Source of the DNA: Macrostomum lignano
Taxonomy: Eukaryota
Length of the DNA stretch: 64,000 bases
NCBI GenBank assembly: GCA_002269645.1
Contig: NIVC01003518.1
Location: 29,711 to 93,710, forward strand
Direction of reading: 5' to 3'
Part shown: positions 5,863 to 60,150 of the stretch, one piece after another
Layout: each line of letters opens with the position of its first letter
Position numbering within the stretch: the stretch's first letter is position 1
Translations under genes and position numbers: made by a program
Notes under the pieces: model-generated
Seen by the model: only the letters and a program-made list of their open reading frames with translations
Databases searched by the model: none
Told to the model about the DNA's origin: nothing

Positions 5863-10948
<5,086 letters not shown>

Positions 10949-11419: not shown

Positions 11420-12390
11420 GCCGGGTTGTGTGCAGATGCCCATGATACCCAAACTATATGTGCGTTTGATCATAACCCAGCAAAGCTAGCTAAGTCACGT
11501 AGGGTGCAGTGTTTGCAAATTTTATTTATTCGCGTCGACCAGAAACACCTAGCATTCATATTTGGAAAAAAAACACACGCATTAAAAAACAAACGAAATA
11601 AAAAGCTAATATATTGAAAACTCAGTAAAATTTAATGGCCTAGAATTAATGAAGAGTCGAGTGTGATTAACATTTTTTAAAAGTAAGCATCCAAGAAAAA
11701 CATTCAGGTACGATTTTGTCATAGAAACTTCACATGAATAACTTTTTTGTTTGTAATAAAGTCTGATTTGTCTATTCTGCAACGATAAATGGCTCTGCAT
11801 AGTTTACATTTTGTAAACCTAGCCGGTACATCGCAAAGTGAAACTGTCTACGTATCAACGCGTGAAATTGTTATAACTATACCATGTATATCACACATAC
11901 AAAAACGCGATATATTAAACAAGACAAAACCAACAAAAGCACCCTTGATGTTAACTCTTCGCACATTAAAATGTTTTATTTTCTTCAAGTAATTACATTG
12001 TATACGATATGAACCTAAAACAGCTAGTGTTTTTTATTGACAATGTAAACTCGCATGACTCGCATGAATTTATAACTCGCATGATTATTTCAATCCATTT
12101 TGATAACGGTATAATATAACTATGTTGTACGAGTTTTCTTCAACCTAAGTCAGACTTTTCATTTCTATTAAACTTCTTTTAATACGTCTGCAAATATATC
12201 ATGAGAAGGAGGATTGTAAGCTCAGCAGTATGAAAGCTTACATTTTTATCTACTAGCTTTTGTGATCCTCGAACTCCGAGCACTGTTACAACCGAAGCAA
12301 GTAGCTACAGCGACCGCCACAAGCCGTATTACAGTGCAATAGCCAGTTACGTATTCTATGCATAAAAAGAGTTTTCACGACGGAAAGTCA

Positions 12391-13030
12391 ACTCTCGCTC
12401 CTTAGATCTCCACTCTCGCTCCCAGATCTCCACTCTCCCTCCCAGATCTCCACTCTCGCTCCCAGATCTCCACTCTCCCTCCCAGATCTCCACTCTCCCT
12501 CCCAGATCTCCACTCTCGCTCCCAGATCTCCACTCTCCCTCCCAGATCTCCACTCTCGCTCCCAGATCTCCGCTCTCGCTCCCAGATCTCCACTCTCCCT
12601 CCCAGATCTCCACTCTCGCTCCCAGATCTCCACTCTCCCTCCCAGATCTCCACTTTCGCTCCCAGATCTCCACTCTCGCTCCCAGATCTCCACTCTCCCT
12701 CCCAGATCTCCACTCTCGCTCCCAGATCTCCACTCTCCCTCCCAGATCTCCACTCTCGCTCCCAGATCTCCGCTCTCGCTCCCAGATCTCCACTCTCCCT
12801 CCCAGATCTCCACTCTCCCTCCCAGATCTCCACTCTCGCTCCCAGATCTCCACTCTCCCTCCCAGATCTCCACTCTCGCTCCCAGATCTCCACTCTCCCT
12901 CCCAGATCTCCACTCTCCCTCCCAGATCTCCACTCTCCCTCCCAGATCTCCACTCTCGCTCCCAGATCTCCACTCTCCCTCCCAGATCTCCACTCTCGCA
13001 CTCTCCCACTTTCCGTTCCAGATCTCTCAC
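12391..13030. repeat. 20-bp tandem satellite, array A (CCCAGATCTCCACTCTC[G/C]CT)n, about 30 units
   Basis: Direct reading; the array degenerates toward 13100. Confidence 0.97.
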
Positions 13031-13342
13031 TATTTAAGATCCCAATTGACACTCTTAGATCCCTTAATCTCACTCTCAAATCCCCAATCTACTACCTAGA
13101 TCCAAATCTAAACTACATATCCATCTACAGTAAAAGATGAACGTTTTTTTGCATTGCGAAAGGACGATTTTAAACAAAAATTGCTCATATCAGTGCGTTC
13201 TTCTTTACTGTAATTAGCACTTAAGTAATACCTTGTCACGTTATTGGCGTAGAGGCTATGACCCTTAGAAGGGCCGTTTTACGAGAGTTGTCGTAAGTCG
13301 TAGTCCCAAAATGAATCGAGTCAAGTCTTGATAAGCGGATTG

Positions 13343-15633: not shown

Positions 15634-17268
15634 ACTCTCGCTCCCAGATCCTCACTATCGCTCCCAGATCCTCACTCTCGCTCTCAGATCCTCACTCTCG
15701 CTCCCAGATCCTCACTCTCGCTCCCAGACCCTCACTCTCGCTCCCAGATCCTCACTCTCGCTCCCAGATCCTCACTCTCGCTCCCAGACCCTCACTCTCG
15801 CTCCCAGATCCTCACTCTCGCTCTCAGATCCTCACTCTCGCTCCCAGATCCTCACTCTCGCTCTCAGATCCTCACTCTCGCTCTCAGATCCTCACTCTCG
15901 CTCTCAGATGCTCACTCTCGCTCTCAGATCCCCACTCTCGCTCTCAGATCCCCACTCTCGCTCCCAGATCCTCACTCTCGCTCCCAGATCCTCACTCTCG
16001 CTCTCAGATCCTCACTCTCGCTCCCAGATCCTCACTCTCGCTCTCAGATCCTCACTCTCGCTCCCAGATCCTCACTCTCGCTCTCAGATCCTCACTCTCG
16101 CTCTCAGATCCTCACTCTCGCTCCCAGATCCTCACTCTCGCTCCCAGATCCTCACTCTCGCTCCCAGATCCTCACTCTCGCTCTCAGATCCTCACTCTCG
16201 CTCCCAGATCCTCACTCTCGCTCCCAGATCCTCACTCTCGCTCCCAGATCCTCACTCTCGCTCCCAGATCCTCACTCTCGCTCCCAGATCCTCACTCTCG
16301 CTCCCAGATCCTCACTCTCGCTCTCAGATCCTCACTCTCGCTCCCAGATCCTCACTCTCGCTCCCAGATCCTCACTCTCGCTCCCAGATCCTCACTCTCG
16401 CTCTCAGATCCTCACTCTCGCTCCCAGATCCTCACTCTCGCTCTCAGATGCTCACTCTCGCTCTCAGATGCTCACTCTCGCTCTCAGATCCCCACTCTCG
16501 CTCTCAGATCCCCACTCTCGCTCCCAGATCCTCACTCTCGCTCCCAGATCCTCACTCTCGCTCTCAGATCCTCACTCTCGCTCCCAGATCCTCACTCTCG
16601 CTCTCAGATCCTCACTCTCGCTCCCAGATCCTCACTCTCGCTCTCAGATCCTCACTCTCGCTCTCAGATCCTCACTCTCGCTCCCAGATCCTCACTCTCG
16701 CTCCCAGATCCTCACTCTCGCTCCCAGATCCTCACTCTCGCTCTCAGATCCTCACTCTCGCTCCCAGATCCTCACTCTCGCTCCCAGATCCTCACTCTCG
16801 CTCCCAGATCCTCACTCTCGCTCTCAAATCCTCACTCTCGCTCCCAGATCCTCACTCTCGCTCTCAGATCCCCACTCTCGCTCTCAGATCCTCACTCTCG
16901 CTCCCAGATCCTCACTCTCGCTCCCAGATCTCCACTCTCGCTCCCAGATCCTCACTCTCGCTCCCAGATCCTCACTCTCGCTCCCAGATCCTCACTCTCG
17001 CTCCCAGATCCTCACTCTCGCTCCCAGATCCTCACTCTCGCTCCCAGATCCTCACTCTCGCTCCCAGATCTCCACTCTCGCTCCCAGATCCTCACTCTCG
17101 CTCTCAGATCCTCACTCTCGCTCCCAGATCCTCACTCTCGCTCCCAGATCCTCACTCTCGCTCCCAGATCCTCACTCTCGCTCCCAGATCCTCACTCTCG
17201 CTCTCAAATCATCACTCTCGCTCCCAGATCCTCACTCTCGCTCCCAGCTCCTCACTCTCGCTCCCAGA
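15634..17268. repeat. 20-bp tandem satellite, array B (C[C/T]CAGATCCTCACTCTCGCT)n, about 80 units, with a 560-bp higher-order duplication
   Basis: Direct reading; the variant pattern starting at 15901 recurs at 16461. Confidence 0.97.
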
Positions 17269-17384
17269 ACTCCCAGAGCGGGGCCATCAGCTGCTAATTT
17301 TCTACTCCACTGTCATGGTTTTATGTAATTAGATGGAACCAAAAGCGGCCTGGGTCGCCCGCTATTCTAATGGAGATGTGACGA

Positions 17385-17931: not shown

Positions 17932-18520
17932 CAAGGAGTTAGTATTCACTTAAGTGCATCAGGTCAACCGTTTTTTGCACACGCAATGGGTTCCGTGACA
18001 ATATTTGTGTTCTCCGGGATTTTATTTGGTAATATTCAATAATATCCCGTAAAATCTTTATGTCTATGGTTTATACGAGATTACACATGCCTTTTTCGGG
18101 AGTTATTTTCATAAATCCATCGGGCCTCAGGCCCTCGTGATTTATACAAATAACTCCCTCAAAAGGCATGTTTAATCTGATACTTAGTTCGAAAAATTTC
18201 ACAAAGCCGTCTAAACAGTTTGTGATATGAAATTGTTTTGAAATAAAGTACATACTAAGTTCAGTCTAATTTATGAGTTAATAAGCACTTCTCTGAGTAT
18301 TCATAAGAGTACAGATATATTTACCATAGATCAGCTCTGATTGAGCTTGACAACAGGCACTAGTCGGCAAACTGCGCTAATTATCGGCACACAAATTAAT
18401 GTATCAGAATCAACCAATTTTGACCTTCGCTAGGATATAAGATATAAAAGCACGTTGCATAGTGAGAATATACTTTCTCGGCAAGGACATGAAGAGTGCG
18501 GGACTTCTTGAATCGGCTCT
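17932..18520 (+). repeat. Dispersed repeat, copy 2, containing an extra palindromic segment
   Basis: Homologous to 14934-15400; a hairpin is present at 18077-18179. Confidence 0.85.
18077..18179. repeat. Imperfect palindrome (~50-bp arms, GGGCC-TCA-GGCCC centre)
   Basis: gagattacacatgcctttttcgggagttattttcataaatc...gatttatacaaataactccctcaaaaggcatgtttaatctg. Confidence 0.8.
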
Positions 18521-18937
18521 CGCTTGGACTTTACTGCTAACCGTAATTGGTAAGCCATTTGTTGACTGTTAAAATATTAGTCCTGGTGTTTACTTATAGC
18601 TAGTTACATGTAGTTACATGCAGAGGTCAATATAGTCGCAAACGAGCTCTAAAAAATGGGGTCGTGCGCACGGATTCTAATCTGGGGTTGTTTTGCGGGA
18701 GAGAGCGAGTAGCCTCGACCGTTAAGCAATTCTACCACTGTATGAAATATTTACCATCTAGCTTTAGACCAGAGGCACGTCTTTGCATTAGGTTCACGAT
18801 ATTTCACAGATTGTGATGAGCAAATTCTCAAGTTAAATAAAATTTTGCGTTCGTGTCAACTACTCGTATATCAACGCAGGTTGGAAGCTGCATTGCAAAA
18901 ACTTAAAAGTAGACTACTAATTACATGCGATGTAGCT

Positions 18938-21900
18938 ATGAAACAATTGATTTTCAGCCAACTATCAGCGCTTTTTGGTGTTTAATGATTGATACTTATA
19001 AAATTTTACCAGTGTATATTTAATTTTAACATTGCAGCGACTGCTGCAGGCCTGGAATGCCATGATCAAGAAAGCACAAATCACACAATAAAATGCTCGG
19101 ATCATCAGAAAACTTGCGCTCGAAGCTACTTTAGCGACGGTGTAAGAATACTAACAGTGCAAAGTGTTAATTCGAATCTACGAATTTCAAAGTCAGATTT
19201 TCAAAAAAATGTTATCGTCTCACTTCTAATTTTAGAAATTTATGGGTGCTTCCTGTGGCGATTGCACCAAGTTTCATTTCGCCGCGCTCTCAGTCGGATT
19301 AACGGCGTTCTGCAAAACCTGCAGCGACGACAAGTGCAACTCTGCTAAGCTAACAAACGGCTTATGTAAGCTTCGGTGCGAATCAAAAATGCAGTAGTAA
19401 GCAAGGAAGATCATACATACACAAGATGGGCCACTCATTAACCACTTATGTGGCCATAGAAGCTAATGTGAATAATTGTGCCACTCGCGACAGCACGAAA
19501 ATCAACTACTGCACTCAATTTCGTCAGTAGTCTCTGCAGTGCATGCATCATTCTTAGTTTGATTGAGTATAGCTTTTTATATAATTCACGAGAATTTCTA
19601 TCCAATTCTTAAAAAATAGCGTCTATGTCCCTAAGCTACAGAACTCAAATTTATAAGCAATCAATTATTTAAAGCTTGTTTTTTCCTGATCTTGTCTAAT
19701 TGATAAAAATTATCTAGTACATGCACGTGTAGATAGTAATACAAGTAGCTAATAAAAAAACAGGAGCGTCGCCAGGGGGGACAGGGGGGACATGTCCCCT
19801 CCAGTAAAAAATCTGGGGCAAATGCCAATGCTTTGTCTCCCCCTTACCCCACCTTTTGTATGACCCGTTGTGGAAATCAATCATCTTGCTGCAAGGCGAC
19901 AAAACATAGCGCCTGCGGCGCCAAAATGAGTGCCTGCGGCGCCAAAATGGTGCCTGTGGCGCCAAAATAAGTGCCTGCGGCGCCAAAATGGTTCCTGTAG
20001 CACTAAATTGAGTGCTGACAACACTGCTGATTCTGAAAATAATGTACATGCAGCAGTTTTGTAATATAATCCACCATAAAATCCAATGCGACGTCCTTTG
20101 AAAATAAGCATAAGAAAGTCAGTTGTTGCAAAAGCCTATTTTATAATAACACTTCAGCTTTCAGGCCTCAATTCTCCTGCTCGGTCGGATCCAACTTGAT
20201 TGTGCTCTGCAACACCGGGGTCAGCGTGTGTTTTCGAGCTAAATACAGCAATGGAGTAAGTTACGCTCGTATTTATTGCTAGAATTAGTCGTGTGACTAA
20301 ATGAGCATCTTATTTCTTTTTTGTTATAAATACAGCGTACAATAAGCGGTTGCGGCGAGTGTGCCGGCATCATGGCTAAGGCCTTGAAAGAGAAAAAAGC
20401 AGTCGCATGCAAAACCTGTTCGGCAGCTAAGTGCAATACCGAAGTTCTATTGACTGTCGAAGGTAAGCAAATCTACATTTACTGTGCATAATCAGATTTG
20501 TTATTAGTTAATAAAGAAAGAAGCAAATTTCAATGACAAGTTACAAGTTACACAATATTAATTGGAAACGCCTTTAGTAGCAAAGGAAGTAGCAAGTAGC
20601 AAAATGACAAAATAAAGCCTTCACAAAGATAACTTCCTTAAATAGACAGCATCCCAATTACCGCAACTATCCCCCAGAATGAAAGCGTTCTCCAGATAGA
20701 CAGTATCCCCCAGATAGAAAGCATGCCCTAGATACCAAGCATCCCAGATAGCAAGCATAGCAAGCATCCCTGAATAGAAAGAATTCTTAGCTAGCAAGTA
20801 CCCCCCAATACAAGCATCCCCCAAATACAATACTAGCAATTAAGCATCCCCCAGAAAGCAAGCATAATTTAAATTGATCGAACACTCTGTAAAAAAGATC
20901 AGGTTGCTGCGCCACAACGAAACAACAGTATAACAAAATAATTTAAAAAGGCTCAGCGAATTCTAAAACTTTCGTCAATTGTGATCGCAATCTTCAAGTC
21001 ACCAGCATTTACCTTTGTCGCACTGTCTGCAACGGATTTTGTGTCGTTAGAATTCATATTTTGCGCTGTTGGCTAAAGTAAATTAAAAAGTAACAGCAAA
21101 ATCATTTTGCTTGATTAGGGTTAGCATTTTATCGGTCTTAACAGCACTCAAGCTTGACAATGACTTTATTAGCTATTTGTTTTAAATCATACACACTGAT
21201 AGCCGTAGGTCTACATGGAATGTAAATGAATTCTTAGTTTTCTCACGATGCTTTGGAAACAAAATGCTGCTATAGAGGAAAACAATTTCTTATGAATATC
21301 CACCCTATATTGATTTCGAATGTTACATATGAATTGTTCCAATTGTTTGCCAGCGCCTACGCCAAAAACGGAGTGTCAACCTAGCGCCGCTGTCGACCCG
21401 AAAATCCCGGCAAAATGCGTCTACTTTCAAAATGAGCACAGCGACGAGGTAAGTGCTCTGAACAACTCGATCTACTCAAGATCAAGTTTTGTACGAGCTA
21501 TATACAAAGCCATCTTTTTTTACAGAAAACGATTATTGCTACTTGCGGAGACTGTGTCAGCTTTTCTAAGTACGCCGACAAAGCGCTAATCTCAACTACT
21601 TGCCAGTCTTGCACTGCAGATACGTGCGCTGCCGAACCATCAATGGCGAAAGTTGGTAAGTATATAGCTGTCTTTTTAATAATTAAGGCTTTTAATCAGA
21701 ATATACTTATTATGAGACGCTTTTTAATAATATTATTGAGCTTTTCGATTCTTATCCGACTAGCAGTGAATTTTCATGTCAAATACTAAAACATTCTGCT
21801 TATTGCAGAGCCAGCTGCTAAAGGCTTAAAGTGCTTCGTTAGTTTCGACCAAAAATCCAAAGTCAAGACGCTAGCAATGTGCAAAGCAGGCGTGAGGCAA

Positions 21901-24900
21901 TGTCACAGAGCCGAGTCTAAAAGCGGACGGGTAAGTCAGACAAACCTCTGTTGGAAGGCGCATGCAGTATTGTTTATTAGTGTATTATTGACAAAGAACA
22001 TTCTTGTGTTTTCAGAATTTTCTACATTCGGGTTGCGGTGACTGCTCGGAAGCCAGTGAGGAAACTAAGAGTTTAGGACGCTTCGCGCGTGTTGAATGCA
22101 AATCCTGCAACACAAACGGATGCAATACGCCAAGCCTAACATTCGATAAATATGGTAATAAATATCTTCGCGGATTATTTATAATTTTTGGTAACATTTT
22201 TCGATTTTTGTCGATAGGACGGTAATTTTAGATTTTTTAAATCAGTTTCTTCACTAAATACGCAGTGTCCCTGGACAGAGTAGTTAGTAAATACGGCCAG
22301 GCAGTCCTTCTTTCAGGAGCTGCTTATGTTTGATTAAGTAGGCTACAGTACTAGCAGAAGTATGACCTGCACCTACAGCCAGGACTGCTTATTTTTAGGA
22401 TGAATAATTTTCTCGAAATGAACAATTGAATAAAACTACTGTAAAGGCGTCATACTGCTGTGTACAAATACACAAAAGAATGAAAAAGCGACTTCATAGA
22501 TATTAGTTTCGAAGCTTGCCGTACTTTTGTCACTTTATTTGTAATATTTTCCGTTCCGTTAGGGTCATACATTTACGTACCTGTATACTAATATATTTTT
22601 CTCAAACATTTTCACTTTTTAGAATCACATTTACGATGACTTACTAATTAAAAACTCTTATTTATTACAGAAGAGGCTAGAAAATGTTATGAAGGCGAAG
22701 ACAAAAGTTATACGATATTGTGCAAATTTTCGGTATGGACATGCATGCGAAGTTACTTCAGCGACGGGGTAGGTCAAATTAATTTATTGTATACTCTCGG
22801 TATAGCTAACAGGGCAGAAAGATATGCCATGTTAGCTATCAGAAAGCTAACAGGGCATATTAGAAATATATTAAACATATTATACAACATAATATAAAAC
22901 ATAATAATAAAACATGATATAAAAAATAATAATATTAATATTAAACTATATTATTATATTATTAATAAATAATAATATAAAACATAATATGAAACATATT
23001 ATATTAGAAATATGACAGGGCATATTTCTGATTACAATAAATCAGAAAGCTAACTTCTACAGAAAGATATCAACAGTTTATATTTGTATCTGATTTATTC
23101 CAGACATTTATGAGCGCGGGTTGCGGAAGCTGCGACAAGTTGCATGCGGAAGCCAAAGCACTTGGAAAGACGGCTATTTGCAGAACTTGCAGCACTAACG
23201 AGTGTAATTCAGCCAGTTTGATGGCAGGTGTTGGTAAGTATAGCTTCAGTTATTATTTCCTCATTTTCTTTGATTTCTTAATTTCTTAATCCTTAGAGCG
23301 ACGTCAGAAACGTTACACTCCGCCTAAAATGCGATTGCCACTTCCTAGTTAAATCAACCTACTTCTTCCAAGTTAGCAGCTATAATCAGGTAACCCAGAA
23401 GACGGAAGAGTTAACTAGGAAGACGGAATAATTGTTTCGTTTACGCTCTCGCAATGATCGTCGCGGAAATTTAGGAGTCCTACTCGAATTTTTCTACTGC
23501 AGCTAGTAGCACCCAAAGATTTTTTCGGTAGTAGTGATTCAAATAGGCTATTCCGGATTTAACAATAGTGTAAGATGAAGATTTAGTATATTGTGATAAT
23601 TTGTTCTGATTATAAATGGCCTTAGAAGTAGCACGAATAAACAATTAAAGTATTTTGCTTTATTTAAGTGCTGTTAATTCAAACCGGATTTTTAACTAGG
23701 ACGCGATCTATTTCTTATTACTAGTTTAACCTTGAATATTCACATTGGCTTCAACTTATTTATGCGGGACTTTTTGTGCATGGGGGTTAATCCTCAGGGT
23801 GTTAATCGCAAGTCAACCCCATAGGCCAATTTTCTTGTACCCCCAAAGTTATCAACTGATGCAAAATAGCGTTTGACATTTGCATTTTTCACTTGGGGCA
23901 AATAAAACTGGGTTAGCTACCGATCATGCTCAGTGCACAATCGGGTGCTACATGTAGCATGCAATTACCTTATAAGATTTCCGTGTAAGAAGGTCCTGAT
24001 ATTTATGCTTATTTCCTGATTAATGTAATTCAATATTAAGTGACGAAATTCTTTGGTTTCTACATTAGTTGCAGAAAACCCACCGTCAGTTTTCGTGCTG
24101 ATTTACAATGAATGCCGTTTTCATTGCAGAATTCCGTGAGTTCTTTCGCTGCCACGTGGCTAATTTTGGCAGAAGATCTTTTACTTCAGTGTGCAATCAT
24201 GGTGTTACTACCTGCTATGAAGCTGAACTTACTGATGGGGTGAAAATTTTGAAGCAAATTTTTTTATTGACAAAATTGAAATTAATTATTTCAACTTCCA
24301 AGTCAATTTGATTTTTTCTTAAACTTGCAGGAAAGGATGGCAAACTGTGGCACCTGTGCAGAGGTTAATAAAAACAAAAAGACAGCCAAAATTTGCAAAA
24401 CTTGCAACACTCCACTATGTAATGTGGGCCTTCTAAAGCCCTCTCAAGGTAAAGAAATTATTGTTGAAGTGACTTAATTTATTAGTATTCTAGAGACAGT
24501 GGCACCTACCAAAAGACAGGGGTACCCACCAATAGACAGTGACCAAGAGACAGTGACCAAAAGACTGTGACCAAGAGACAGTGACCAAGAGACAGTGACC
24601 AAGAGACAGTGACCAAGAGACAGTGACCAAGAGACAGTGACCAAGAGACAGTGACCAAGAGACAGTGACCAAGAGACAGTGACCAAGAGACAGTGACCAA
24701 GAGACAGTGACCAAAAGACTGTGACCAAGAGACAGTGACCAAGAGACAGTGACCAAGAGACAGTGACCAAGAGACAGTGACCAGAGAGACAGTGACCAAG
24801 CGACAGTGACCAAGAGACTGTGACCAAGAGACAGTGACCAGAGATACAGTGACCAAGCGACAGTGACCAAGAGACTGTGACCAAGAGACAGTGACCAAGA

Positions 24901-27900
24901 GACAGTGACCAAGAGACAGTGACCAAGGGACAGTGGCGCCCACCAAGAGGCAGTGGCGCCCACCAAGAGACAGGGGTGCCCACCAAAATGCCTAATTTGT
25001 AGGCCCTTCCCTGGTAAAATGTACTGAAATTAGGCAACTCATAGCTATAGCAGCACATCAATAAACTTTAAAAGAAGATTGCATACTTTTTTATCCGATA
25101 CAGACTTTGAGTGCTACGTGAGCTTCAATAATTCAGTAAACGTTGTGGAAAAATGCCCGCCGGGAGTAAAAAGCTGTTTCCGAGCCAAATCCACTGATGG
25201 GGTAAGTCGGTTTGATAAGCATACTTGTTTTTTGATGTGTGTAATTTAAATTGTGTAACGATTGTGTAACGAATGCCCATTCCGCTAATCCCTGAACGGC
25301 CGACGCGTCGCTATAGATGATTGATTATCCATAGTCGGCTCGAAGGCCATGATAAAAGGTTGGTGGGCTACCCTAGAAGGGGCGCGGTACCCACCCGGCC
25401 GCTCCACCTAACCGGGCAGTAGGCCAAAAGAACCCTCAAGGCTGGCCCGACACCAGGAGGGGGACCACTTGCGACCGGACAACTCCCCGGCCTTCCAGCT
25501 TATTGGCACGATCAACACCTTAGGCATTAGAGCGTACGTTGAGCAGTACCACGGCCCGCATACCCAAGTTCGGCAAAAGCCACTGGATGGTCCCCAGCGC
25601 CGGAGCCCAGTCTATCCGGCAGCCCTAGGGTCTGCCTTGAACACTCGCGGCCCGGACGGATACCCCTGAGTCGGCTTGCGAGACAGCGTGGGGGGGGGGT
25701 CTGCGGCTGCCAGCGGCAAATCTAGGGTGCAGACCTCCCACCAGCCTTTACCTGCTGAAGATAAGGGCATGGTCTGTCTCATACTTCACTATCATGCTGA
25801 ATATGCCCCTGCGAGCGAATCACTTCATATAGAGAACCGTGAAAATGCATACAGGAAAAATAATATTTCCGGGTTTTTTCCTGGTAGAAATTAATATCAC
25901 AATAAAATTAGTTAAAAACGAAACTCTATTTAAATATCTTGAGCATGCGTTCCACTGAATCGATGATAAAACGACACAAAAAATTGCGTATACACATGTA
26001 TCTACAACCAAATTGTCAAACTACACCAGTATAATTTTATATGGAAACTTTCTATTAGTGTATGCACTATTCATGTCGCAGTTTTTTTGAGAGTCTACAT
26101 TGATTCCTCATACTGTTCATGGTAAAATATATTTAATGTTCTTTAAGGAATTCGACAGAAAATTTAATTGATAGTCAAATTAATTTTAAGGCGGTATTCA
26201 TTGCTGCCTGCGGGAATTGCGAGCCGTTCAATTCTCACATCAAAGGAGCAGCCGAGGGTGTCACTTGCAAGGCCTGCGGCACGGAACGGTGCAATTCGGC
26301 CCAACCGCCGGAAAAAGCTGGTGAGAATTTATTTTCAGAAACTGACATACTGTAAAAGGAAATTTACACAAAAGCACATAGGGCATTCGTATCGTATGCA
26401 GTTTTATAGAAAATATTATAGATAACACACTTAAACCGACGCAGAGTTAGTCAATTAATTTGAGAGCGACTAAATCGGAAGATTTTATTGTGTCCAAAGA
26501 TGACGTCATAATCACTAGTTAATGTTGGACACGTCAATAATAACGTCATGCATCACGGATGTACTAGTCCGTGTTTAACCCGATCCATAGAGAGACAGCT
26601 AGCAGTCCGATGTCTAAATTGATATTTATAATATTTAACTTAATTTATACCACAATTTAATACGCGTCTATTTAACGTACATGTACGGGCGTATCTTATT
26701 ATCAGCCACTGAAGGCATCGAGTGTAACATTAACTTTGGAACCGGCGCTAGCACAACGGTGAAATGTGGAGCAACAGTCCGGTCCTGTTTCCGAGCCGAG
26801 CTAAAGGACGGGGTAGGACTATTCGGGATGTGAATTTTATTCAGCAGCGAAGCAACTATAGGCGAAATTTATCTACAAAAATTACTCTGCAATTTCAGAA
26901 GGAATTCGCCTCTTGTGGCGATTGCAATGGGGCTACTGCTCTGTTTGGGCGTATTGGAAATTTGGTCAGGTGCGATGCCTGTTTTACTGATCGATGCGGT
27001 TCAATGCAAGGTAAGAAGTACTATACTAGTAACAGTGTCCCCTGACTGACTCGTATATTACGGTCGTAATTTTACCAGTAAAATACCGGTATCTATCTGA
27101 GTGATTAGCGATATGGCCAATGTGTAAATATTTTAATTGTTAACTGAAAAAAACGATACCAATAATGAGGTCGCTACACTTCAGCCGTCAAACTTGCATC
27201 GAGACTCGCGTGTTACACCTATGCCAGCAAAACTTTAAGAACGGAGATAGGATGCAGCCCCGGACAGACGAGCTGTTTTCTGGCTGAATTCAGTAGCGGG
27301 GTAATTCAAGGCCTACTAATCGCTGTTTCATTGTAGTAGATAAAGCTGCATTGATAACTTTAGTAATTTCCAAGCAATTTTACCTTACAAATCTTTCCAG
27401 TCTGTCTCAGGTGGTTGCGGAGACTGCTCCCGTAGTAAGACTTTTGCTAATGGTATGAGACAGTCTGTCAATTGCAGCACCTGTACCACAGACAAGTGCA
27501 ATACGTTTTCGTCAACATCTGGAGCTGGTAAGTAGCTCGTAGTACCTAACTGCTTTTGGTATGCTATTTTAGAATAGAGATGAAGAAGTAAAGATTTTTT
27601 TATTTTTTTTATTAGAGGCAGGGGGTTGTGTACACCCTGGCGCACTTTAAGCGACATAGGCACACAACCGGCGAGAGGCATTACTGCCCATTCCGCCGAC
27701 TCCCCTGAGCAGGCATAGCTCGTACAAGCGCGGATACGTACGCAGGCACACACTCACACAGGAGTGTACAGCGGCCCTAACTTTATATTATCGTTAGGCA
27801 TGTACACTTCACTGCGCCTTGGGGGGTTGGCTCTCAAGGCCGTTAATTGCACGAGCAGAGCCAAGCCGAGATTCCAATTCAGCCCCAAATTAATGTGACT

Positions 27901-30443
27901 GCACTTGGAATCGAGCCTGGGTCGCAGGCACACCAGAGCCTGCGCTAGACCGCTGGGCTACGGCCCCCCCCCTATAAAGTAAAGATAGTATGAGCCATAG
28001 ACAACATGCACATTTTTTACTGAGAAACCCACGACTGAAAGACAACAATTTTCAAGCCTGCATACGATTGGGCATCAAAATTGAGAGTCACTATGATTGA
28101 ATACCTCAAGGAGCATCTTCGGTTGACTGCAGCAGTTGTTGATCTAGGAATTAGCAAAAGAAGTCACTAGTGCAGACTGATGTTTATCGAATCGTTTGAA
28201 ATATATAGGAAAGGACATCCTTGTGTTCTAGAGTCCTAGAGATGTGCTAGATTAGAGTTCTCAGTGGAGTTTCTCAGTAAGAAATGTGCCTGCTAGGGTG
28301 CAACCCTTTGGTTATCTGTTTTCTTAATTAGCACAACGGAAGTAATACTCCTTCTTTAACTCTTTCTTTAAGCCGATTAACTGGCATAAAAGTCCATTAA
28401 TTGCCTCCCACGTTCTTGTAACGGTCATTATCATGTACTATACAAAACACGTTTTCAGCCGCAGCTGGCCCAGCACCTGTACTGACATGCTATGCACACT
28501 CAAACACTGCCGCAAAAATCGAACAGAGCTGTCCTGGATTCAATAAGTGCTATTTGGCCATTTACGGTAGTGGGGTGAGTCGACGCACAGATGTCAACGC
28601 GCATTGTTATTTAAACAGAAAGTCAGTTGTTCGATGCATGTGTTTGATTTTTTTCAGGCGGAATCGGGTAATTGCGGAGACTGCTCCCTGATCGAGTCTG
28701 CAGCTAAACTTACAGGACAAACAGTCAAATGTAGCACCTGCAGCACAGACAAGTGTAATGCGGGCTCGTCTACAGGTGCCATCGGCGCCGGCGGTGAGTG
28801 CCAATATACGATAATTTTTTAACTAGCTATGGGAATGGAGACAATTATCCTATATACGTCTAGAACCATTCCCTAGGCGCACTTATCTCGGTTTTAAAGG
28901 TTCCTTAGCATGAAAACACGCATATACCTACCGACAGACCATTTTTAGTACTTGGAAGTTGGGCCTACGAGCTAAACTTTCTTGCCTTCTCACTGCCTTT
29001 GATTTGCGGTAGTGCAGAGTGCTCACCTACAAACTAAAATATTTCCTGTGGATAAAAAAATAACAGTTTCAGGGCCTGGAAGTGCATCGGCCCTCGCGTG
29101 CTACTTGTTTGACTACAAAAGCAACGGACAACCCACTGAGCAGAAATGTTTTACAGGTCGAGAGTGTATGACAGTTTTCCATGATAAAAAAGTAAGTCAG
29201 CCTAAGTCTTCAAGGAATGAATAAAGATACTTCAAGTTAATTTTCGTTTGATTCTTTGCTATTATAGGCCATGTCGGGTGCTTGCGGAGACTGCTCGTTT
29301 ATCAATAGTGCAGTCAAGAAGATGGCGGTAAATTCGATAACATGCACAACCTGCAGCAAAGACAAGTGCAACTCAGGCTGGTCAAATAGCGGAGCTGGTG
29401 GTGAGCTTATCAGACGTTCGGGTGACATGTTCAACCAATTTTTTCAAGAATAGTTGGTAAAAACAAACAATACGTGCATGAATTTCAGGATGCACCAGGG
29501 GCTTTAGCACCAGGGGCTTTAGCACCAGGGGCGCCAGCACCAGGGGCTTTAGCACCAGGGGCTTTAGCACCAGGGGCTTTAGCACCAGGGGCGCCAGCAC
29601 CAGGGGCTTTAGCACCAGGGGCTTTAGCACCAGGGGCTTTAGCACCAGGGGCGCCAGCACCAGGGGCTTTAGCACCAAGGGCGCCAGCAGCAACAGTCGT
29701 TAGCAGCGAAAAAGCTACAAAAGGAGGGCAACGTATCCTTTTAGCAAATTCATTGCTCTCACCTCGCGATTCGGCCCCTTCGCTTTAGGTTTTTGAGCAC
29801 TAAATATTGCTTAGTGTTAATTCGATGCGTATTTACATTTTAGTGCCTGCATCGGCTCCAGGATTCAAGTGCTACGTGTTTAACAACAACGGCAGTGGTA
29901 AAATGACTGTTAAATGCAGTTCGCCTCTTAGCTGTCTGCTTTCCAAATATAATAATGGGAACAGTGATGTAAGTCACAAGTGTCCTGTCGGAATATTTTG
30001 ATTTCTACAAGTAAAAAATCAACTTCAACTCCCTTTAAGCTTGTGCTTGATAGTTGGATGGAAGTTTTCGTATGATTCCATCATTGAGGGCCAAACCCCA
30101 AATGCACAGAGGGTACGTCACAGCCTGACGATTAGAAAGCCAGGGCCGCTGTACACCTGTGTGAGCGTGTCTATGAGTGTCTCATTTATTAGCAACATGA
30201 ATGTCTTTGCAGATTTTTGAAGGCAGATGTGGAGACTGCGCCGCGATAAACGCCATGGGCAAGATAACAGGAGTGAAAGTCGAGTGTCACAGCTGCAAAA
30301 CTGACCTGTGCAACTCTGTTGAAGAATTCAAGAGAATCAGCAGTGCCAAGTCTGATGAGCAAAGCAGCGCTTCCTCGGTACAATACGGCAATATTGAAGC
30401 CATTGGCATAAATGTATTTTTGACTGTATTTGCTTATGCTTGA
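18938..30443 (+). CDS. Multi-exon gene for a ~996-aa secreted/GPI-anchored protein with 12 tandem 8-Cys three-finger (LU/Ly6/DUF753-like) modules
   Basis: Tentative signal exon 18938-18977 (MKQLIFSQLSALF). A/B exon pairs: 19038-19141/19236-19365; 20158-20255/20336-20462; 21354-21448/21526-21655; 21809-21930/22016-22154; 22671-22768/23104-23233; 24130-24239/24331-24448; 25104-25201/26191-26320; 26706-26812/26899-27010; 27185-27300/27401-27527; 28459-28574/28658-28793; 29073-29191/29268-29400; 29844-29968/30213-30443. All introns are GT-AG with phases 1-0-1, and the exons sum to 2991 nt in one open frame. B exons carry CGxC...CxxCxxxxC(N). The protein ends in the hydrophobic tail AIGINVFLTVFAYA*. 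Confidence 0.88.
19761..20000 (+). mobile_element. Fragment of a non-autonomous DNA transposon (hAT-like end) with internal ~21-bp repeats, intronic
   Basis: Starts CAGGAGCGTCGCCAGGGGG and has four gtgcctg(c/t)ggcgccaaaat-like units; no matching second TIR found. Confidence 0.4.
24530..24930. repeat. 15-bp minisatellite (GACAGTGACCAAGAG-like), intronic
   Basis: Direct reading. Confidence 0.95.
25270..25800. other. GC-rich insertion of unknown origin in the intron inside module 7
   Basis: Abrupt GC-rich segment in an AT-rich intron with no convincing ORF. Confidence 0.35.
27596..27976 (-). mobile_element. tRNA-derived SINE, copy 1
   Basis: Reverse complement of 34951-35310 with high identity; A-rich tail; TSD AAGTAAAGAT at 27586-27595 and 27977-27986. 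Confidence 0.88.
29494..29690. repeat. 15-bp minisatellite (GCACCAGGGGCTTTA / GCACCAGGGGCGCCA), intronic
   Basis: Direct reading; variants alternate in a regular higher-order pattern. Confidence 0.95.
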
Positions 30444-31898
30444 ATTAGTTTAAAGCATCAAGACTAAAAATGTGCTTGGCTCTAGAAAAGGTAAAATGAG
30501 AAATTTAAAGTTGTTTTTAACAGTCCACCAATATGCTATGCTGCTCCCGATGCTGCCACTAAAAAGTTGAAGAATAACATAACTTTTTAAGCCACATCTT
30601 TCGCACATTATTCCCACATACGTGTACTACATGTACGTAATGAACATAACCCTACCCACATAACAAAGTATATTTTTTCGTAAAAAATTTTAAATGCAAG
30701 GTTTTCGAGACTGAACAACAGTTACCGCTGTATGTACTTTAGTAAATCTATTGCAACCAGTTCGTACACATATAAATGTGCTGCTTTTGTAACTTCTGTA
30801 CGAAACAGTTTGTTTAAATTGCTAATAAATATCTGCAAGCTTGCTATCTACGCACATGGTATGGTTACATGGTAATAGATGCGACAGTACATGCACACAA
30901 GGCATACTTTTCCTACACCTTGCATGTATGCTCGTATGCATGCCAATGATCTTAACTTTATCAATTTGATGCTTAATGTTCGTACAACTGGACATAATAA
31001 ATTGGACGAAGTTCTCTGTTATACGGTAACTACTGCTCATATATTGTAAATGTTCTATGCGCGATATCCTACAACTCTCAAAGTGCTTGCAAAGTTAAAA
31101 CCATTCTGTTCTATTATTTATGTTTGTCAATTAATTTTGTCATTTAAAATTTTAAAGTGAACGCTTTATACACTTTCTGATACATTGATACACTTTTATT
31201 TGCAAAATAGGTTTTCTGTGAACATGTCCAAATTAAAAAACATGTACAAAATTGTACAAACATGTACCCCATATCATGCACTATATGGTAATTATAGACT
31301 GTCGAAGTGCTAATGTTAGCTTTCACTTGCATGTACGGCTATATGTTTGCAAACTGCAGATAAACATGAATAAAAAAGCGTCAAATACGCCTTCATACTT
31401 TAATACAGCTGATATACTTAGTTGCACAGTCAAAATGGATGCGCTTGCTTAGTGTCATTTTAAATTCATGCAATAAGCTAAAAATAATAAATGCTCAGTA
31501 GTATACGCGGTCGTACACAATGAATTTGCTCGTAAAGGTACATAGATATTATTTCATGCTAACGATATTAAAGTAATTTGCAGATTTGGAGCAGATTCTG
31601 AGCATTAATTACGAGTATATAACCGTGAATTTTTTCTGCAAAGAAAATAACAAAAAATACATGGTTGTCAGGAACTTCGAAAATAAATATTCTAGATAGA
31701 ATATCCCTTTAAAGTACAACTAATTTTAGTTGCTAGTAAATTATTGACTAGCTTCTTTGATTTAAATTTATTTAAAAATGATTTATTTGTTTGCATGAAC
31801 TTTTTACGGCAATTTAAAAATAAATTGGTATATGCATTTCTGATAGTAATTACCTACCTACAGTAAATGACTACGGCCAAGCTGTTTGCGGCTTCACT

Positions 31899-57649
<25,751 letters not shown>

Positions 57650-58147: not shown

Positions 58148-58915
58148 ATGGACATCGGCGAAGGATATAAACTCCAAATACAGGAGTATGAAGGAGTTAT
58201 GTTCATTGCTATCAGAAAATTTTACCGACATGGCAGCACTGCGAGTTTGAAACCTGGAGTCCCCGGCTTCAATTTGAACATCCGTCAGTGGGAGAAGCTC
58301 AAGGAGTTGAAGCGATCGCTTGTCAAGGCGGCCTTGGACAAACAGCCAAAGGTTGTCAAACTCGGCTTCGATAAGTTCATCGAAGTGAAAAACGGCATTA
58401 TCTGGTTAAAGCGATTGCCGGAGGACTGCTGCGACGAGTTTCTTAAGCGGAACACCGTGCCGCTGACACCGCCGCTGTGGCGAAAGCTGTGGCAGTACGC
58501 GGATTGGATCGACGAGCAGCTATCGGCTCCACGTGAGATTTCCGATGTATACGAGCTGGAGTCGGGATCTTCCTCCAACAGCATCGAAAATGAAGACGGT
58601 GCTGGCGAAAACGCGGAAGAGACCAAGCCGGTAGTGAAGGCGGAGGACGATGCTCCTGCTGCTGCTGGCGATGTGGCTGGCATGCCATCCAATCTGCAAA
58701 TCGACACAGCGTTTGCCACTTCAACGCCTCTGCAGCTGACCAAGCCAGCAGCTGGAGCGATTCCTCGGCAGGACACTGATCTGCAAGAGGACCCAGTCTG
58801 GTACCAGTTCCGAGCTCAAGCAGCCGCCGCTGAGAACGCCAGGAAACGCAAGCAGCCGCCGTTCGCTCTGCGCAGATTGGATGCCATGAAGCTGCCCAGG
58901 CCGTGCTTCGACTGA
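58148..58915 (+). CDS. PC4-like ssDNA-binding protein with two PC4-type repeats and an acidic tail
   Basis: IGEGYKLQIQEYEGVMFIAIRKFY...LKPGVPGFNLNIRQWEKL fits the PC4 pattern; a second degenerate copy reads LGFDKFIEV...LTPPLWRKL...WIDEQL; TATATAA at about 58065. Confidence 0.7.
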   Translation: MDIGEGYKLQIQEYEGVMFIAIRKFYRHGSTASLKPGVPGFNLNIRQWEKLKELKRSLVKAALDKQPKVVKLGFDKFIEVKNGIIWLKRLPEDCCDEFLKRNTVPLTPPLWRKLWQYADWIDEQLSAPREISDVYELESGSSSNSIENEDGAGENAEETKPVVKAEDDAPAAAGDVAGMPSNLQIDTAFATSTPLQLTKPAAGAIPRQDTDLQEDPVWYQFRAQAAAAENARKRKQPPFALRRLDAMKLPRPCFD

Positions 58916-59082: not shown

Positions 59083-60150
59083 ATGGAAAAAATTTATTTC
59101 AACCCAAATCAGCCTGCGAGCTATTGCAGTTCTTCAAAACTGCAACCTGAACTGCGAAAAAGAGGCGAGCATATTGAAGTCAAGAGCATTGAGCAGTGGC
59201 TAAGTCAGCAGCCAGTACACACTCTGCATAAGCCAGCTAGAGTACGATTTCCAAGGGCGCCAATAATAGTGAGGGCCATTGATGATCAGTGGGAGATGGA
59301 TCTGGTGTAAATGATTCCGTTTGCAAAGTATAATCGCGGGCATAAATACATTCTCACCTGCATTGATGTTTTGTCTAAATTTGCAATGGCCAGAGCACTG
59401 AAGTCTAAGAGCGCGGCAGAAGTGAAATCTGCGTTTGAGAGCATGCTGAAGAGCTCAAAGCGGCAGCCGCGCACTGTCCGCACAGATCAGGGAAAGGAGT
59501 TTGTCAACGCAATTTTTCGCCAGTTCTGCATAGACCGGGGGATTCTGGCGTTTCCAACTAGCAGTGAGCACAAAGCAGCCATAATTGAAAGATGGAATCG
59601 AACTTTAAAAAGCAAGATGTGGCGTTACTTTACTCACAACAGCACTCTACAATGGCTTGATGTGCTGCCTAAACTGGTCAAGTCCTATAACAATACTTTC
59701 CACAGAAGCATCAAGACTACACCAATGAATGTCAGCAAAGCAAACGAGACTGAAGTGTGGATGAACCTTTATGATGGGAAAGCGATTGAGACAGTTGAGA
59801 AACTGAGAAAACCGAAGTTCTGTGAAAACCAATCAGTGCGGATTTCCAATGCACCCAGACTCTTCAGGAAGGGATACAAGGCGAACTGGAGCGAGGAGGT
59901 GTACACCATAGTGTTTAGGGCACCAAAGCATTATCCCTACATGTACAGGATTCGAGACATGAAGGGGGAAGACATTAGAGGCCTCTTCCATGAGCATGAG
60001 CTGCAAGCTGTTCCGGACTCGCAGCGGCTGTATGTAATCGAGAAGGTTCTGAAGACTGAGAAGCGGAAGGGAAAGATCCGATATCTCGTCAAGTGGGCCG
60101 GCTACAAGTCCACTGACTGGGTGGATGAGAAGGACTTAAGAAAAGTGTAA
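59083..60150 (+). pseudogene. Retroviral-type (rve) integrase with C-terminal chromodomain; in-frame TAA at 59308-59310
   Basis: IYFNP..PASY, HTLHKPAR..FPR, DQWEMDLV*M, LTCIDVLSK, RTDQGKEF, KAAIIERWNRTLK, NWSEEVY, chromodomain IEKVLK...YLVKWAGY...WV. Confidence 0.9.

What the first reader, a model, noticed from the sequence alone, without database searches (positions are those of the whole stretch)
18938..30443. Hidden 25-exon gene: 12 tandem, highly divergent 8-Cys three-finger-like modules on a probable GPI anchor
The ORF track misses this gene, but 24 short exons assemble with canonical splice sites into one ~996-aa frame. Each module has C-x~10-C-x5-6-C in exon A and CGxC-x~15-CxxCxxxxCN in exon B. 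Sequence between the cysteines differs almost completely from module to module, and later modules are separated by Gly/Ala/Ser/Pro linkers. The CxxCxxxxCN end resembles LU/three-finger and DUF753-type folds (established knowledge). Most Ly6/uPAR proteins I know carry 1-3 domains, and the CGxC core is atypical, so this may be an undescribed surface-receptor, adhesion or mucus protein family (inference). Module 3 lacks one Cys in exon A, and modules 3 and 8 lack the terminal Asn.
Basis: partly seen in the sequence, partly recalled or inferred. Interest (0 to 1): 0.88.

Follow-up and report, generated by a model that had tools for sequence, protein, structure and literature searches.

The report
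Flatworm gene with twelve three-finger domains
This is a real, already annotated but uncharacterised gene of the flatworm Macrostomum lignano, encoding a probably lipid-anchored surface protein made of twelve tandem Ly6/uPAR-type "three-finger" domains; it is an unusually long and divergent member of a well-known protein superfamily, not a new kind of protein.

Summary
The first coding exon is 18489-18549, not 18938-18977. With that exon the 1005-aa product is identical to GenBank PAA51013.1 ("hypothetical protein BOX15_Mlig019351g2", Macrostomum lignano). The window matches contig NIVC01003518.1 of assembly Mlig_3_7, whose annotation comes from RNA-seq.

The protein has a signal peptide, 12 divergent 70-82-aa modules (about 21% non-Cys identity) and a GPI-signal-like tail. 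Each module shows the 8-Cys variant of the Ly6/uPAR (LU) signature. Each is encoded by two exons flanked by phase-1 introns, with the inner intron at the tip of loop 2, which is the LU gene hallmark. AlphaFold2 gives a confident three-finger fold (pLDDT 91), and all of the top 50 PDB matches are three-finger proteins.

No Pfam family reaches its threshold, and 1.84 billion representative proteins hold no relative outside M. lignano. The three genomic copies are intact, keep all 95 Cys and show dN/dS of 0.19-0.42.

Multi-LU proteins with 2 to 44 domains are already reported in Drosophila, so I rate this a new member of a known kind. Function and site of expression remain unknown.

The parts
18489..18549 (+). 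Exon 1: start codon and signal peptide (MKSAGLLESALAWTLLLTVI); phase-1 donor TTG|GTAAGC
   Evidence: tblastn of PAA65389/PAA51013/PAA85130 gives 100% identity at 18489-18548. The model using this exon is identical to P0002. Hydropathy reaches 2.5.
19038..19141 (+). Exon 2: module 1, exon A (Cys 1-3, ends ...SDG at the loop-2 tip)
   Evidence: In the AF2 model the intron falls between strands 23-28 and 33-38.
19236..19365 (+). Exon 3: module 1, exon B (CGDC...CKTCSDDKCN)
20158..20255 (+). Exon 4: module 2A
   Evidence: AF2 pair model.
20336..20462 (+). Exon 5: module 2B
21354..21448 (+). Exon 6: module 3A (lacks the third Cys, so the module has 7 Cys)
21526..21655 (+). Exon 7: module 3B (ends CAAE, with no Asn after the last Cys)
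21809..21930 (+). Exon 8: module 4A
22016..22154 (+). Exon 9: module 4B
22671..22768 (+). Exon 10: module 5A (module 5 is 49% identical to module 1)
23104..23233 (+). Exon 11: module 5B
24130..24239 (+). Exon 12: module 6A
24331..24448 (+). Exon 13: module 6B
25104..25201 (+). Exon 14: module 7A
26191..26320 (+). Exon 15: module 7B (weak acceptor TTTTAAG|G, but confirmed by the annotated protein)
26706..26812 (+). Exon 16: module 8A
26899..27010 (+). Exon 17: module 8B (ends CGSMQ, with no Asn)
27185..27300 (+). Exon 18: module 9A
27401..27527 (+). Exon 19: module 9B plus the start of a Ser/Gly/Ala linker
28459..28574 (+). Exon 20: Ala/Gly/Pro linker plus module 10A
   Evidence: Module 10 aligns end to end with short-chain three-finger toxins.
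28658..28793 (+). Exon 21: module 10B plus linker
29067..29191 (+). Exon 22: linker plus module 11A
29268..29400 (+). Exon 23: module 11B plus linker
29844..29968 (+). Exon 24: linker plus module 12A
30213..30443 (+). Exon 25: module 12B, Ser-rich stalk, hydrophobic C-terminal tail and stop codon (30441-30443)
   Evidence: Module 12 gives the best sub-threshold Pfam hit, CD59 at E 7e-4.
30363..30440 (+). Putative GPI-attachment signal inside exon 25: SSASS (small-residue candidate omega site), spacer VQYGN, then the hydrophobic end IEAIGINVFLTVFAYA
   Evidence: Kyte-Doolittle 9-residue means reach 2.2 over the last 14 residues, and no residues follow the hydrophobic stretch. No GPI predictor was available.

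Best explanation
The locus is the Macrostomum lignano gene Mlig019351.g2. It encodes a secretory-pathway protein built from a signal peptide, twelve tandem Ly6/uPAR (LU, three-finger) domains and a C-terminal GPI-attachment-type signal.

Origin of the array (inferred): it grew by repeated tandem duplication of the standard LU two-exon cassette. Every module is bounded by phase-1 introns and split by a phase-0 intron at the tip of loop 2, so any duplication or skipping of a cassette keeps the reading frame.

Module structure: each module is the 8-Cys form of the LU domain, lacking the loop-1 '2-3' disulfide. By alignment to three-finger toxins, the four disulfides should join module Cys 1-3, 2-4, 5-6 and 7-8 (inferred). 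The core is a small beta-sheet carrying three loops, and the third loop is predicted to be helical.

Likely mode of action: the loops have diverged to about 20% identity between modules. The protein would therefore present twelve different binding surfaces on a flexible string tethered to the outer leaflet of the plasma membrane. The four membrane-proximal modules are spaced by Gly/Ala/Ser/Pro linkers. The most likely role is non-enzymatic binding of extracellular proteins at a cell surface, as a receptor, adhesion or barrier component, like other GPI-anchored LU proteins.

Shown here: the exon structure, identity to the annotated protein, the Cys signature, the predicted fold and purifying selection. 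Inferred: disulfide pairing, GPI anchoring, surface location and the binding role.
For: - Gene model: 25 GT-AG exons with strictly alternating phases. The translation is identical to PAA51013.1, and the window equals NIVC01003518.1.
- Transcript support: the Mlig_3_7 annotation was built only from RNA-seq and transcript assemblies (PMC5730564).
- Constraint: three genomic copies are intact, all 95 Cys are unchanged, exon indels are multiples of three and dN/dS is 0.19-0.42. Introns differ by 2.2-4.3% with many indels; exons differ by about 1%.
- Fold, one module: AF2 on module 1 with the 12-module alignment gives pLDDT 91.2 and pTM 0.76. All top-50 Foldseek PDB matches are three-finger proteins (Prod1, alpha-bungarotoxin, snake toxins, uPAR, BMP/activin receptor ectodomains, CD59), with probability about 1 and TM 0.5-0.77.
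- Fold, two modules: the model gives the same order of secondary structure in both modules and matches uPAR best across both.
- Sequence: the module profile and module 10 align end to end with short-chain neurotoxins, with the Cys in register.
- Pfam: the sub-threshold hits that recur across modules are all LU-type families. They are DUF753 (6 of 12 modules), CD59, Toxin_cobra-type, Toxin_TOLIP and UPAR_LY6; the other weak hits are mostly one-off zinc-ribbon-type models.
- Gene architecture: it matches the LU hallmark in PMC6600238, namely a signal exon, two exons per domain, phase-1 flanks and the inner intron at the loop-2 tip. The introns fall between the predicted loop-2 strands in both modelled modules.
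- Termini: hydrophobic N- and C-termini with nothing after the C-terminal stretch.
Against: - No Pfam LU-type family reaches its gathering score. The best are DUF753 at 17 bits against a cutoff of 24.7, and CD59 at 19.7 against 33.9.
- Foldseek E-values are modest, 0.013 or higher for one module.
- Disulfide pairing could not be read from the model, because coordinates are not exposed.
- GPI anchoring rests on a hydropathy pattern only, and the hydrophobic tail is short and contains Glu and Asn.
- No expression site, ligand or phenotype is known. The gene ids were not found in the supplements of four M. lignano expression papers.
- The two-module model has pTM 0.48, so nothing can be said about how the domains pack.
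Confidence: 0.75

Rival explanations
1. The fold is the same, but the protein is secreted into an extracellular matrix or mucus layer (for example a gut or epidermal coat) and is not GPI-anchored. The C-terminal hydrophobic stretch would then be removed or play no anchoring role.
For: Insect proteins with 2-5 DUF753 domains were recovered by proteomics from the larval peritrophic matrix of Hermetia illucens (PMC8035744), and DUF753 is the Pfam family that most modules resemble. The Ser/Gly/Ala/Pro linkers could carry O-glycans. The hydrophobic tail is short and imperfect.
Against: The protein ends exactly at a hydrophobic stretch of about 16 residues. That stretch is preceded by small residues and a short polar spacer, which is the canonical GPI-signal layout. 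GPI anchoring is the rule for multi-LU proteins and for the Drosophila LU proteins reviewed in PMC6600238.
Confidence: 0.15
2. The gene encodes a polyprotein precursor that is cleaved into twelve separate three-finger toxin-like or signalling peptides.
For: Individual modules align end to end with snake short-chain neurotoxins and share the 8-Cys pattern. The modules are highly divergent, as in toxin families.
Against: None of the eleven linkers contains a dibasic (KR/RR) or other obvious processing site; this was read directly from the sequence. The GPI-type tail and the uPAR-like tandem layout argue for an intact chain.
Confidence: 0.04
3. The CGxC...CxxC halves are zinc-ribbon knuckles, making this a repeat of metal-binding modules and not disulfide-bonded domains.
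For: The best E-values of the module profile against PDB sequences are to ribosomal protein eS27 zinc ribbons (E 0.006, profile positions 36-68 only). Scattered weak Pfam zinc-ribbon hits also appear.
Against: These matches cover only the C-terminal half of a module. Toxin matches cover positions 2-68. The protein has a signal peptide, so it folds in the oxidising secretory pathway. AF2 places this segment as the helical third finger and last strand of a three-finger fold, and all structural neighbours are three-finger proteins.
Confidence: 0.02
4. The reading frame is a decaying repeat or an annotation artefact with no function.
For: No homologue outside M. lignano was found. The flanks are rich in transposons and minisatellites.
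Against: Three copies keep all 25 exons open, all 95 Cys and all splice sites, with dN/dS below 1 and only in-frame indels; exons are more conserved than introns. The annotation derives from transcripts.
Confidence: 0.02

Closest known systems
Vertebrate GPI-anchored multi-LU proteins (uPAR with 3 LU domains; C4.4A/LYPD3 and Haldisin/LYPD5 with 2)
   Same: Tandem LU domains only, a signal peptide and a GPI-type C-terminus. Each domain is encoded by its own two-exon set with phase-1 flanks (PMC6600238). uPAR is the best structural match to the two-module model.
   Different: This protein has twelve domains, not 2-3. All modules lack the 2-3 disulfide but keep 7-8, whereas vertebrate multi-LU proteins lack 7-8 in the N-terminal domain. 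Cys 8 and 9 are separated by two residues (CxxC) where these proteins have adjacent CC. No significant sequence similarity is detectable.
Drosophila multi-LU proteins and insect multi-DUF753 (PF05444) proteins
   Same: These are invertebrate proteins built of many LU-type repeats. The review reports 2 to 44 LU domains per protein in Drosophila (PMC6600238). Insect proteins with 2-5 DUF753 domains are extracellular (PMC8035744). DUF753 is the Pfam model that most modules hit, covering almost the whole 79-position model.
   Different: All DUF753 scores are below the gathering cutoff (about 17 bits against 24.7). The organism is a flatworm. No orthology is demonstrable.
Schistosome SmCD59-like / SmLy6 proteins
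   Same: Flatworm three-finger-domain proteins with a signal peptide and GPI signal, some located in the tegument surface; their function is also unknown (PMC3812095).
   Different: They have a single domain with 10 Cys. None was retrieved by any sequence search from this gene.
Snake short-chain three-finger toxins, Prod1 and CD59 (single-domain three-finger proteins)
   Same: The same 8-Cys core pattern as the short-chain toxins, and local motifs such as CPG..CY and TDKCN. Prod1 is the top structural hit and CD59 also matches. From my own recollection, not tested here: Prod1 and CD59 both have a helical third finger, as predicted for these modules.
   Different: These are single secreted or GPI-anchored domains. 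The toxins have CGC and CC where this gene has CGxC and CxxC. Sequence E-values are not significant (0.016-0.6).

Membership tests
Ly6/uPAR (LU) / three-finger protein domain superfamily | Domain of 60-90 residues (PMC6600238) | tested here: met
   Module cores are 70-82 aa.
Ly6/uPAR (LU) / three-finger protein domain superfamily | Conserved cysteine pattern: 10 plesiotypic Cys, or the common 8-Cys form lacking the 2-3 pair | tested here: met
   Eleven of 12 modules have 8 Cys, at positions corresponding to LU Cys 1, 4, 5, 6, 7, 8, 9 and 10. Module 3 lacks one. The Cys align in register with short-chain toxins apart from CGxC/CGC and CxxC/CC.
Ly6/uPAR (LU) / three-finger protein domain superfamily | Asn immediately after the last Cys | tested here: met
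   Present in 10 of 12 modules and absent in modules 3 and 8.
Ly6/uPAR (LU) / three-finger protein domain superfamily | Three-finger beta fold | tested here: met
   This is a prediction only. AF2 gives pLDDT 91.2 and all top-50 PDB neighbours are three-finger proteins. The second module in the pair model has the same layout.
Ly6/uPAR (LU) / three-finger protein domain superfamily | Gene structure: a signal exon, then two exons per domain flanked by phase-1 introns, with the inner intron at the tip of loop 2 | tested here: met
   True of 12 of 12 modules. The intron lies between predicted strands 23-28 and 33-38 in module 1 and between 99-104 and 109-113 in module 2. The criterion is from PMC6600238.
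Ly6/uPAR (LU) / three-finger protein domain superfamily | Disulfide connectivity 1-5, 4-6, 7-8, 9-10 | not testable with these tools
   Model coordinates are not exposed and no experimental data exist. The pairing is inferred from alignment to toxins.
Ly6/uPAR (LU) / three-finger protein domain superfamily | Significant match to a curated LU-type sequence model (UPAR_LY6, Toxin_TOLIP, CD59, DUF753 and others) | tested here: not met
   The whole protein gives no hit. Single modules and pairs give only sub-threshold hits: DUF753 at 17 bits or less against 24.7, CD59 at 19.7 against 33.9, UPAR_LY6 at E 0.43.
GPI-anchored proteins | An N-terminal signal peptide, plus a C-terminal signal made of a small omega residue, a polar spacer and a terminal hydrophobic stretch; experimentally, release by PI-PLC | tested here: inconclusive
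   The sequence layout fits (SSASS, VQYGN, IEAIGINVFLTVFAYA, then the end) and the hydropathy fits. No GPI or signal-peptide predictor and no experiment were available.
Pfam DUF753 (PF05444); UniRef names the fragment model A0A1I8GG40 'DUF753 domain-containing protein' | Score at or above the gathering cutoff of 24.7 bits | tested here: not met
   The best score is 17.2 bits. Six of 12 modules hit at E of 0.008 or weaker. The fragment P0004 itself gives no DUF753 hit with this Pfam release.
Giardia-type variant-specific surface protein (the UniRef name given to the three full-length copies) | Match to the VSP family model. From my own knowledge: CXXC-rich ectodomain followed by a transmembrane helix and a conserved CRGKA cytoplasmic tail | tested here: not met
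   No VSP hit appears even at E up to 10. The protein ends ...FLTVFAYA with no cytoplasmic tail. The UniRef name looks like an automatic label.
Zinc ribbon (eS27-like) | Two CxxC knuckles binding zinc in a cytosolic or nuclear protein | tested here: inconclusive
   A CGxC...CxxC pattern is present, with partial matches at E of 0.006 or weaker. However, the protein has a signal peptide and the segment is modelled as part of a three-finger fold. Metal binding was not testable.

The most novel reading that the evidence does not exclude
The gene founds a Macrostomum-restricted, fast-evolving family of very long multi-LU surface proteins. Its twelve divergent three-finger modules would act as a combinatorial recognition surface, for example in gamete or partner recognition in this hermaphrodite, or in epithelial or gut barrier organisation. 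The uniform exon phases would allow in-frame exon skipping that creates chimeric A(i)-B(j) modules. The fragment model A0A1I8GG40, which joins exon 4A directly to exon 7B, hints at this.
Probability: 0.12. Interest if true: 0.55.

Novelty: new member of a known kind. Interest (0 to 1): 0.3.

Why it matters
It gives a fold and a family to a flatworm protein that databases call "hypothetical" or, misleadingly, "variant-specific surface protein". It also shows that LU domains can drift below the reach of Pfam and of HMM searches over 1.8 billion proteins. Even so, they stay recognisable by three features together: the cysteine signature, the two-exon phase-1 gene architecture and the predicted structure. 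For M. lignano, where transgenesis and RNAi are available, it offers a tractable and probably surface-exposed multi-LU protein. That could help study what long LU arrays do, which is also unknown for the Drosophila proteins with 2 to 44 domains. It does not reveal a new kind of system.

Tried and rejected
- **Whole-protein Pfam scan:** nothing relevant.
- **Homologue searches:** the full protein found only its own cluster. The 12-module profile found nothing even at E up to 10. An exhaustive HMM search of 1.84 billion representatives found only the gene's own cluster, one fragment model of the same gene, and two spurious tandem-repeat ORFs, P0005 and P0006.
- **Expression data:** I searched the main text of all held papers and the supplements of four M. 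lignano papers for Mlig019351 and Mlig015647 and found no occurrence. A fifth paper had no supplement held.
- **Literature:** searches for Macrostomum with Ly6 or three-finger found nothing relevant.
- **Overlapping module pairs:** the alignment (A2) was staggered by MAFFT and discarded. Non-overlapping pairs (A3) were used.
- **Intronic 15-bp minisatellite as a hidden linker exon:** its (APGAL)n frame does not fit the phase-1 junctions, and the frame that fits runs into a stop. I rejected it as coding under the present model.
it keeps the frame and looks weakly signal-like, but it has a weak donor and is not the exon used by the transcript-derived annotation.
- **Polyprotein idea:** rejected, because no linker holds a dibasic site.

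Full report

Six-frame translation of 18000-31500 shows, on the + strand only, twelve open segments of the type C...C.....C...(S/D/N)G. Each is followed by a segment of the type CGxC...CxxCxxxxC(N). I enumerated GT donors and AG acceptors that keep the frame and assembled 25 exons. All have canonical GT-AG borders. Every intron inside a module is phase 0 and every intron between modules is phase 1.

The long pattern CGxC-x(10-24)-CxxCxxxxC occurs 12 times in the gene and nowhere else in the six frames of the 64-kb window. The short pattern CxxCxxxxCN occurs 10 times in the gene and twice elsewhere.

- Module 3 has only 7 Cys.
- Modules 3 and 8 lack the final Asn.
- Modules 9-12 are separated by Gly/Ala/Ser/Pro linkers.
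- The modules are very divergent, with a mean identity of 21% outside the cysteines (range 9-42%). The closest are modules 1 and 5 (49% overall) and modules 9, 10 and 11 (41-46%).

**2. What and where it is**

A search of the protein collection returned one cluster of three Macrostomum lignano proteins (PAA65389.1, PAA51013.1 and PAA85130.1). GenBank calls them "hypothetical protein" and UniRef calls them "Variant-specific surface protein".

Replacing exon 1 with 18489-18549 (donor TTG|GTAAGC, phase 1) gives a 1005-aa protein identical at every residue to PAA51013.1, BOX15_Mlig019351g2. The gene region of the window is an exact substring of contig NIVC01003518.1 of assembly GCA_002269645.1, Mlig_3_7.

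So the gene is annotated. The Mlig_3_7 annotation was produced only from RNA-seq-guided and de novo transcript assemblies with TransDecoder ORFs (PMC5730564). The exon chain therefore has indirect transcript support. I could not look at reads directly.

**3. Is it a working gene?**

The assembly holds three copies (L001, L002 and L003, the last being the window). This is expected for this recently polyploid genome.
- All 25 exons, all splice sites and all 95 cysteines are kept.
- Exon indels are 3 or 6 bases.
- Pairwise dN/dS is 0.19, 0.28 and 0.42, on 12-18 substitutions of each class.
- Introns differ by 2.2-4.3% and carry about 1500-1900 gap columns; coding sequence differs by about 1%.

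This is purifying selection, not decay.

**4. What the modules are**

Curated sequence models do not recognise them. The whole protein gives no relevant Pfam hit. Single modules and pairs give only sub-threshold hits, and the families that recur across modules are all LU-type; the other weak hits are mostly one-off zinc-ribbon-type models:
- DUF753 in 6 of 12 modules, best 17 bits against a cutoff of 24.7.
- CD59 in 2 modules, 19.7 bits against 33.9.
- Toxin_cobra-type in 3 modules.
- Toxin_TOLIP in 2 modules.
- UPAR_LY6 in 1 module.

A profile of the 12 modules against PDB sequences gives two kinds of weak match. Short-chain neurotoxins match end to end (profile positions 2-68, E 0.016-0.3). 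eS27 zinc ribbons match the C-terminal half only (E 0.006). Module 10 alone aligns over its whole length with short-chain toxins, with the Cys in register and shared motifs: TCYAHSNTAAKIEQSCPGFNKCY against [23 protein letters not shown], and CSTDKCN against CTTDKCN.

Structure prediction settles the fold. AlphaFold2 on module 1 with the 12-module alignment gives mean pLDDT 91.2 and pTM 0.76. The layout is two beta-hairpins, a helix and a last strand. All 50 best Foldseek matches in the PDB are three-finger proteins: Prod1, alpha-bungarotoxin, many snake toxins, uPAR, BMP/activin receptor ectodomains and CD59. Probabilities are about 1, TM-scores are 0.5-0.77 and E-values are 0.013-0.12, as usual for such small domains.

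A two-module model (six non-overlapping pairs as the alignment) has pLDDT 81. Both modules show the same order of elements, confidence is lowest in the linker, and pTM is only 0.48, so there is no confident fixed interface. Its best matches, covering both modules, are uPAR structures.

**5. Comparison with the definition of the family**

The review by Leth et al. (PMC6600238) defines LU domains by these features:
- 60-90 residues.
- Ten plesiotypic Cys paired 1-5, 2-3, 4-6, 7-8 and 9-10.
- An invariant Asn after the last Cys.
- The three-finger fold.
- A gene structure of one signal exon plus two exons per domain, flanked by phase-1 introns, with the inner intron at the tip of loop 2. Multi-domain members repeat this exon set for each domain.

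The review also says that loss of the 2-3 bond is frequent. It gave rise to the 8-Cys snake toxins.

Here all 12 modules have the two-exon, phase-1 structure. In both modelled modules the inner intron falls in the turn between the two loop-2 strands (G31|K32 between strands 23-28 and 33-38; G107|R108 between 99-104 and 109-113). The eight Cys correspond to LU Cys 1, 4, 5, 6, 7, 8, 9 and 10, and Asn follows the last Cys in 10 of 12 modules.

The differences from the usual pattern are small. There are two residues between Cys 6 and 7 (CGxC), and two residues between Cys 8 and 9 (CxxC, where CC is usual).

I therefore file the modules in the LU superfamily. Fold, signature and gene architecture agree. 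I also record that the curated sequence-model criterion was tested and not met, and that disulfide pairing could not be tested.

**6. The ends of the protein**

The N-terminus (MKSAGLLESALAWTLLLTVIATAAG|LEC) has a hydrophobic core with window means up to 2.5.

The C-terminus has a Ser-rich stretch (SSAKSDEQSSASS), a short polar spacer (VQYGN) and a terminal hydrophobic run (IEAIGINVFLTVFAYA) with nothing after it. This is the standard layout of a GPI-attachment signal, and GPI anchoring is usual for multi-LU proteins. No predictor was available, so this step is inferred.

**7. How it most likely works**

The array most likely arose by repeated tandem duplication of the phase-symmetric two-exon cassette, followed by long divergence of the loops while the disulfide core was kept. 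The product would be a string of twelve different three-finger binding surfaces tethered to the outer membrane leaflet, with flexible linkers between the four membrane-proximal modules.

Known LU proteins act by protein-protein contacts through their loops and the concave sheet face, so a non-enzymatic binding role at a cell surface is the best guess. I put about 0.75 on [quoted passage not shown]. I have no evidence on the tissue or the partner.

The rivals, with the evidence for and against each set out in their own section, are:
- A secreted matrix or mucus protein. Multi-DUF753 proteins are present in a fly peritrophic matrix (PMC8035744).
- A toxin polyprotein. No processing sites occur in any linker.
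- Zinc-ribbon repeats. The matches cover only half a module, and the protein has a signal peptide.
- A non-functional frame. This is contradicted.

**8. Relatives and novelty**

No relative outside M. lignano was detected. The searches were the whole protein, the module profile over 1.84 billion representatives and the word-seeded profile search at E up to 10. The only other true hit is A0A1I8GG40, a 282-aa fragment model of the same gene that UniRef names "DUF753 domain-containing protein".

Flatworm three-finger proteins are known, but as single 10-Cys domains (SmCD59/SmLy6; PMC3812095). Long arrays are known too: the review cites Drosophila proteins with 2 to 44 LU domains.

The finding is therefore a new, lineage-restricted and unusually divergent member of a known kind. 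It is not a new kind. Interest is moderate to low (0.3). The gene is real and its fold assignment is new information for a "hypothetical protein", but neither the domain nor the architecture is surprising to a specialist.

Noticed in passing
window 7937-10948 (+), 59311-60150 (+), 47815-48570 (-), 58148-58915 (+): The flanks of the gene carry transposon-derived ORFs and one other ORF. There is a 1003-aa ORF with reverse transcriptase plus RNase H, an integrase-core plus chromodomain ORF, and a weak P-element-transposase-like ORF. There is also an ORF with a PC4 (transcriptional coactivator p15) domain.
   Followed up: partly
window 12356-13079, 15908-17332, 38769-39770, 49437-50238, 50955-51730: These are long minisatellite or microsatellite arrays that stay open in several frames and so appear as long artefactual ORFs, for example (SIYL)n and a 20-aa SQILTLAPRSSLSLPDPHSR unit. 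Two spurious repeat 'proteins' of this type (P0005, P0006) were also the only non-self hits of the profile search.
   Followed up: no
window 24528-24935 (intron 13) and 29492-29682 (intron 23): Both are intronic minisatellites inside the gene: 14 bp x 29 copies and 15 bp x 12.7 copies. The second reads (APGAL)n in one frame, resembling the Gly/Ala/Pro linkers of neighbouring exons. That frame does not fit the phase-1 junctions, and the frame that fits ends in a stop. Intron 23 is 443, 712 and 865 bp in the three copies.
   Followed up: partly
P0004 (UniRef100_A0A1I8GG40), relative to window exons 8, 15 and 25: This 282-aa M. lignano protein model joins exon 4A directly to exon 7B, and 7B through 17 unrelated residues to 12B. 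Because all A-B introns are phase 0, such a join keeps the frame and would make a chimeric three-finger module. It may be exon skipping, a degenerate fourth copy or a misassembly in an older assembly.
   Followed up: partly
It is 98.5-99.3% conserved in the other two copies, which is no more than the surrounding intron. It could be an alternative first exon, but the annotation does not use it.
   Followed up: partly
L002 17542-24499 (intron 14 of the copy on NIVC01000345.1): Intron 14 is 6958 bp in this copy against 989-992 bp in the other two. This suggests a large insertion, possibly a transposon, in one copy.
   Followed up: no
L001 23458-32061 and L002 38118-38910: In two of the three copies the annotation calls a large + strand gene (1249 and 1221 aa) downstream. 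No + strand gene is called in the equivalent stretch of the window's contig. The downstream stretches held for these loci contain none of the module patterns.
   Followed up: no
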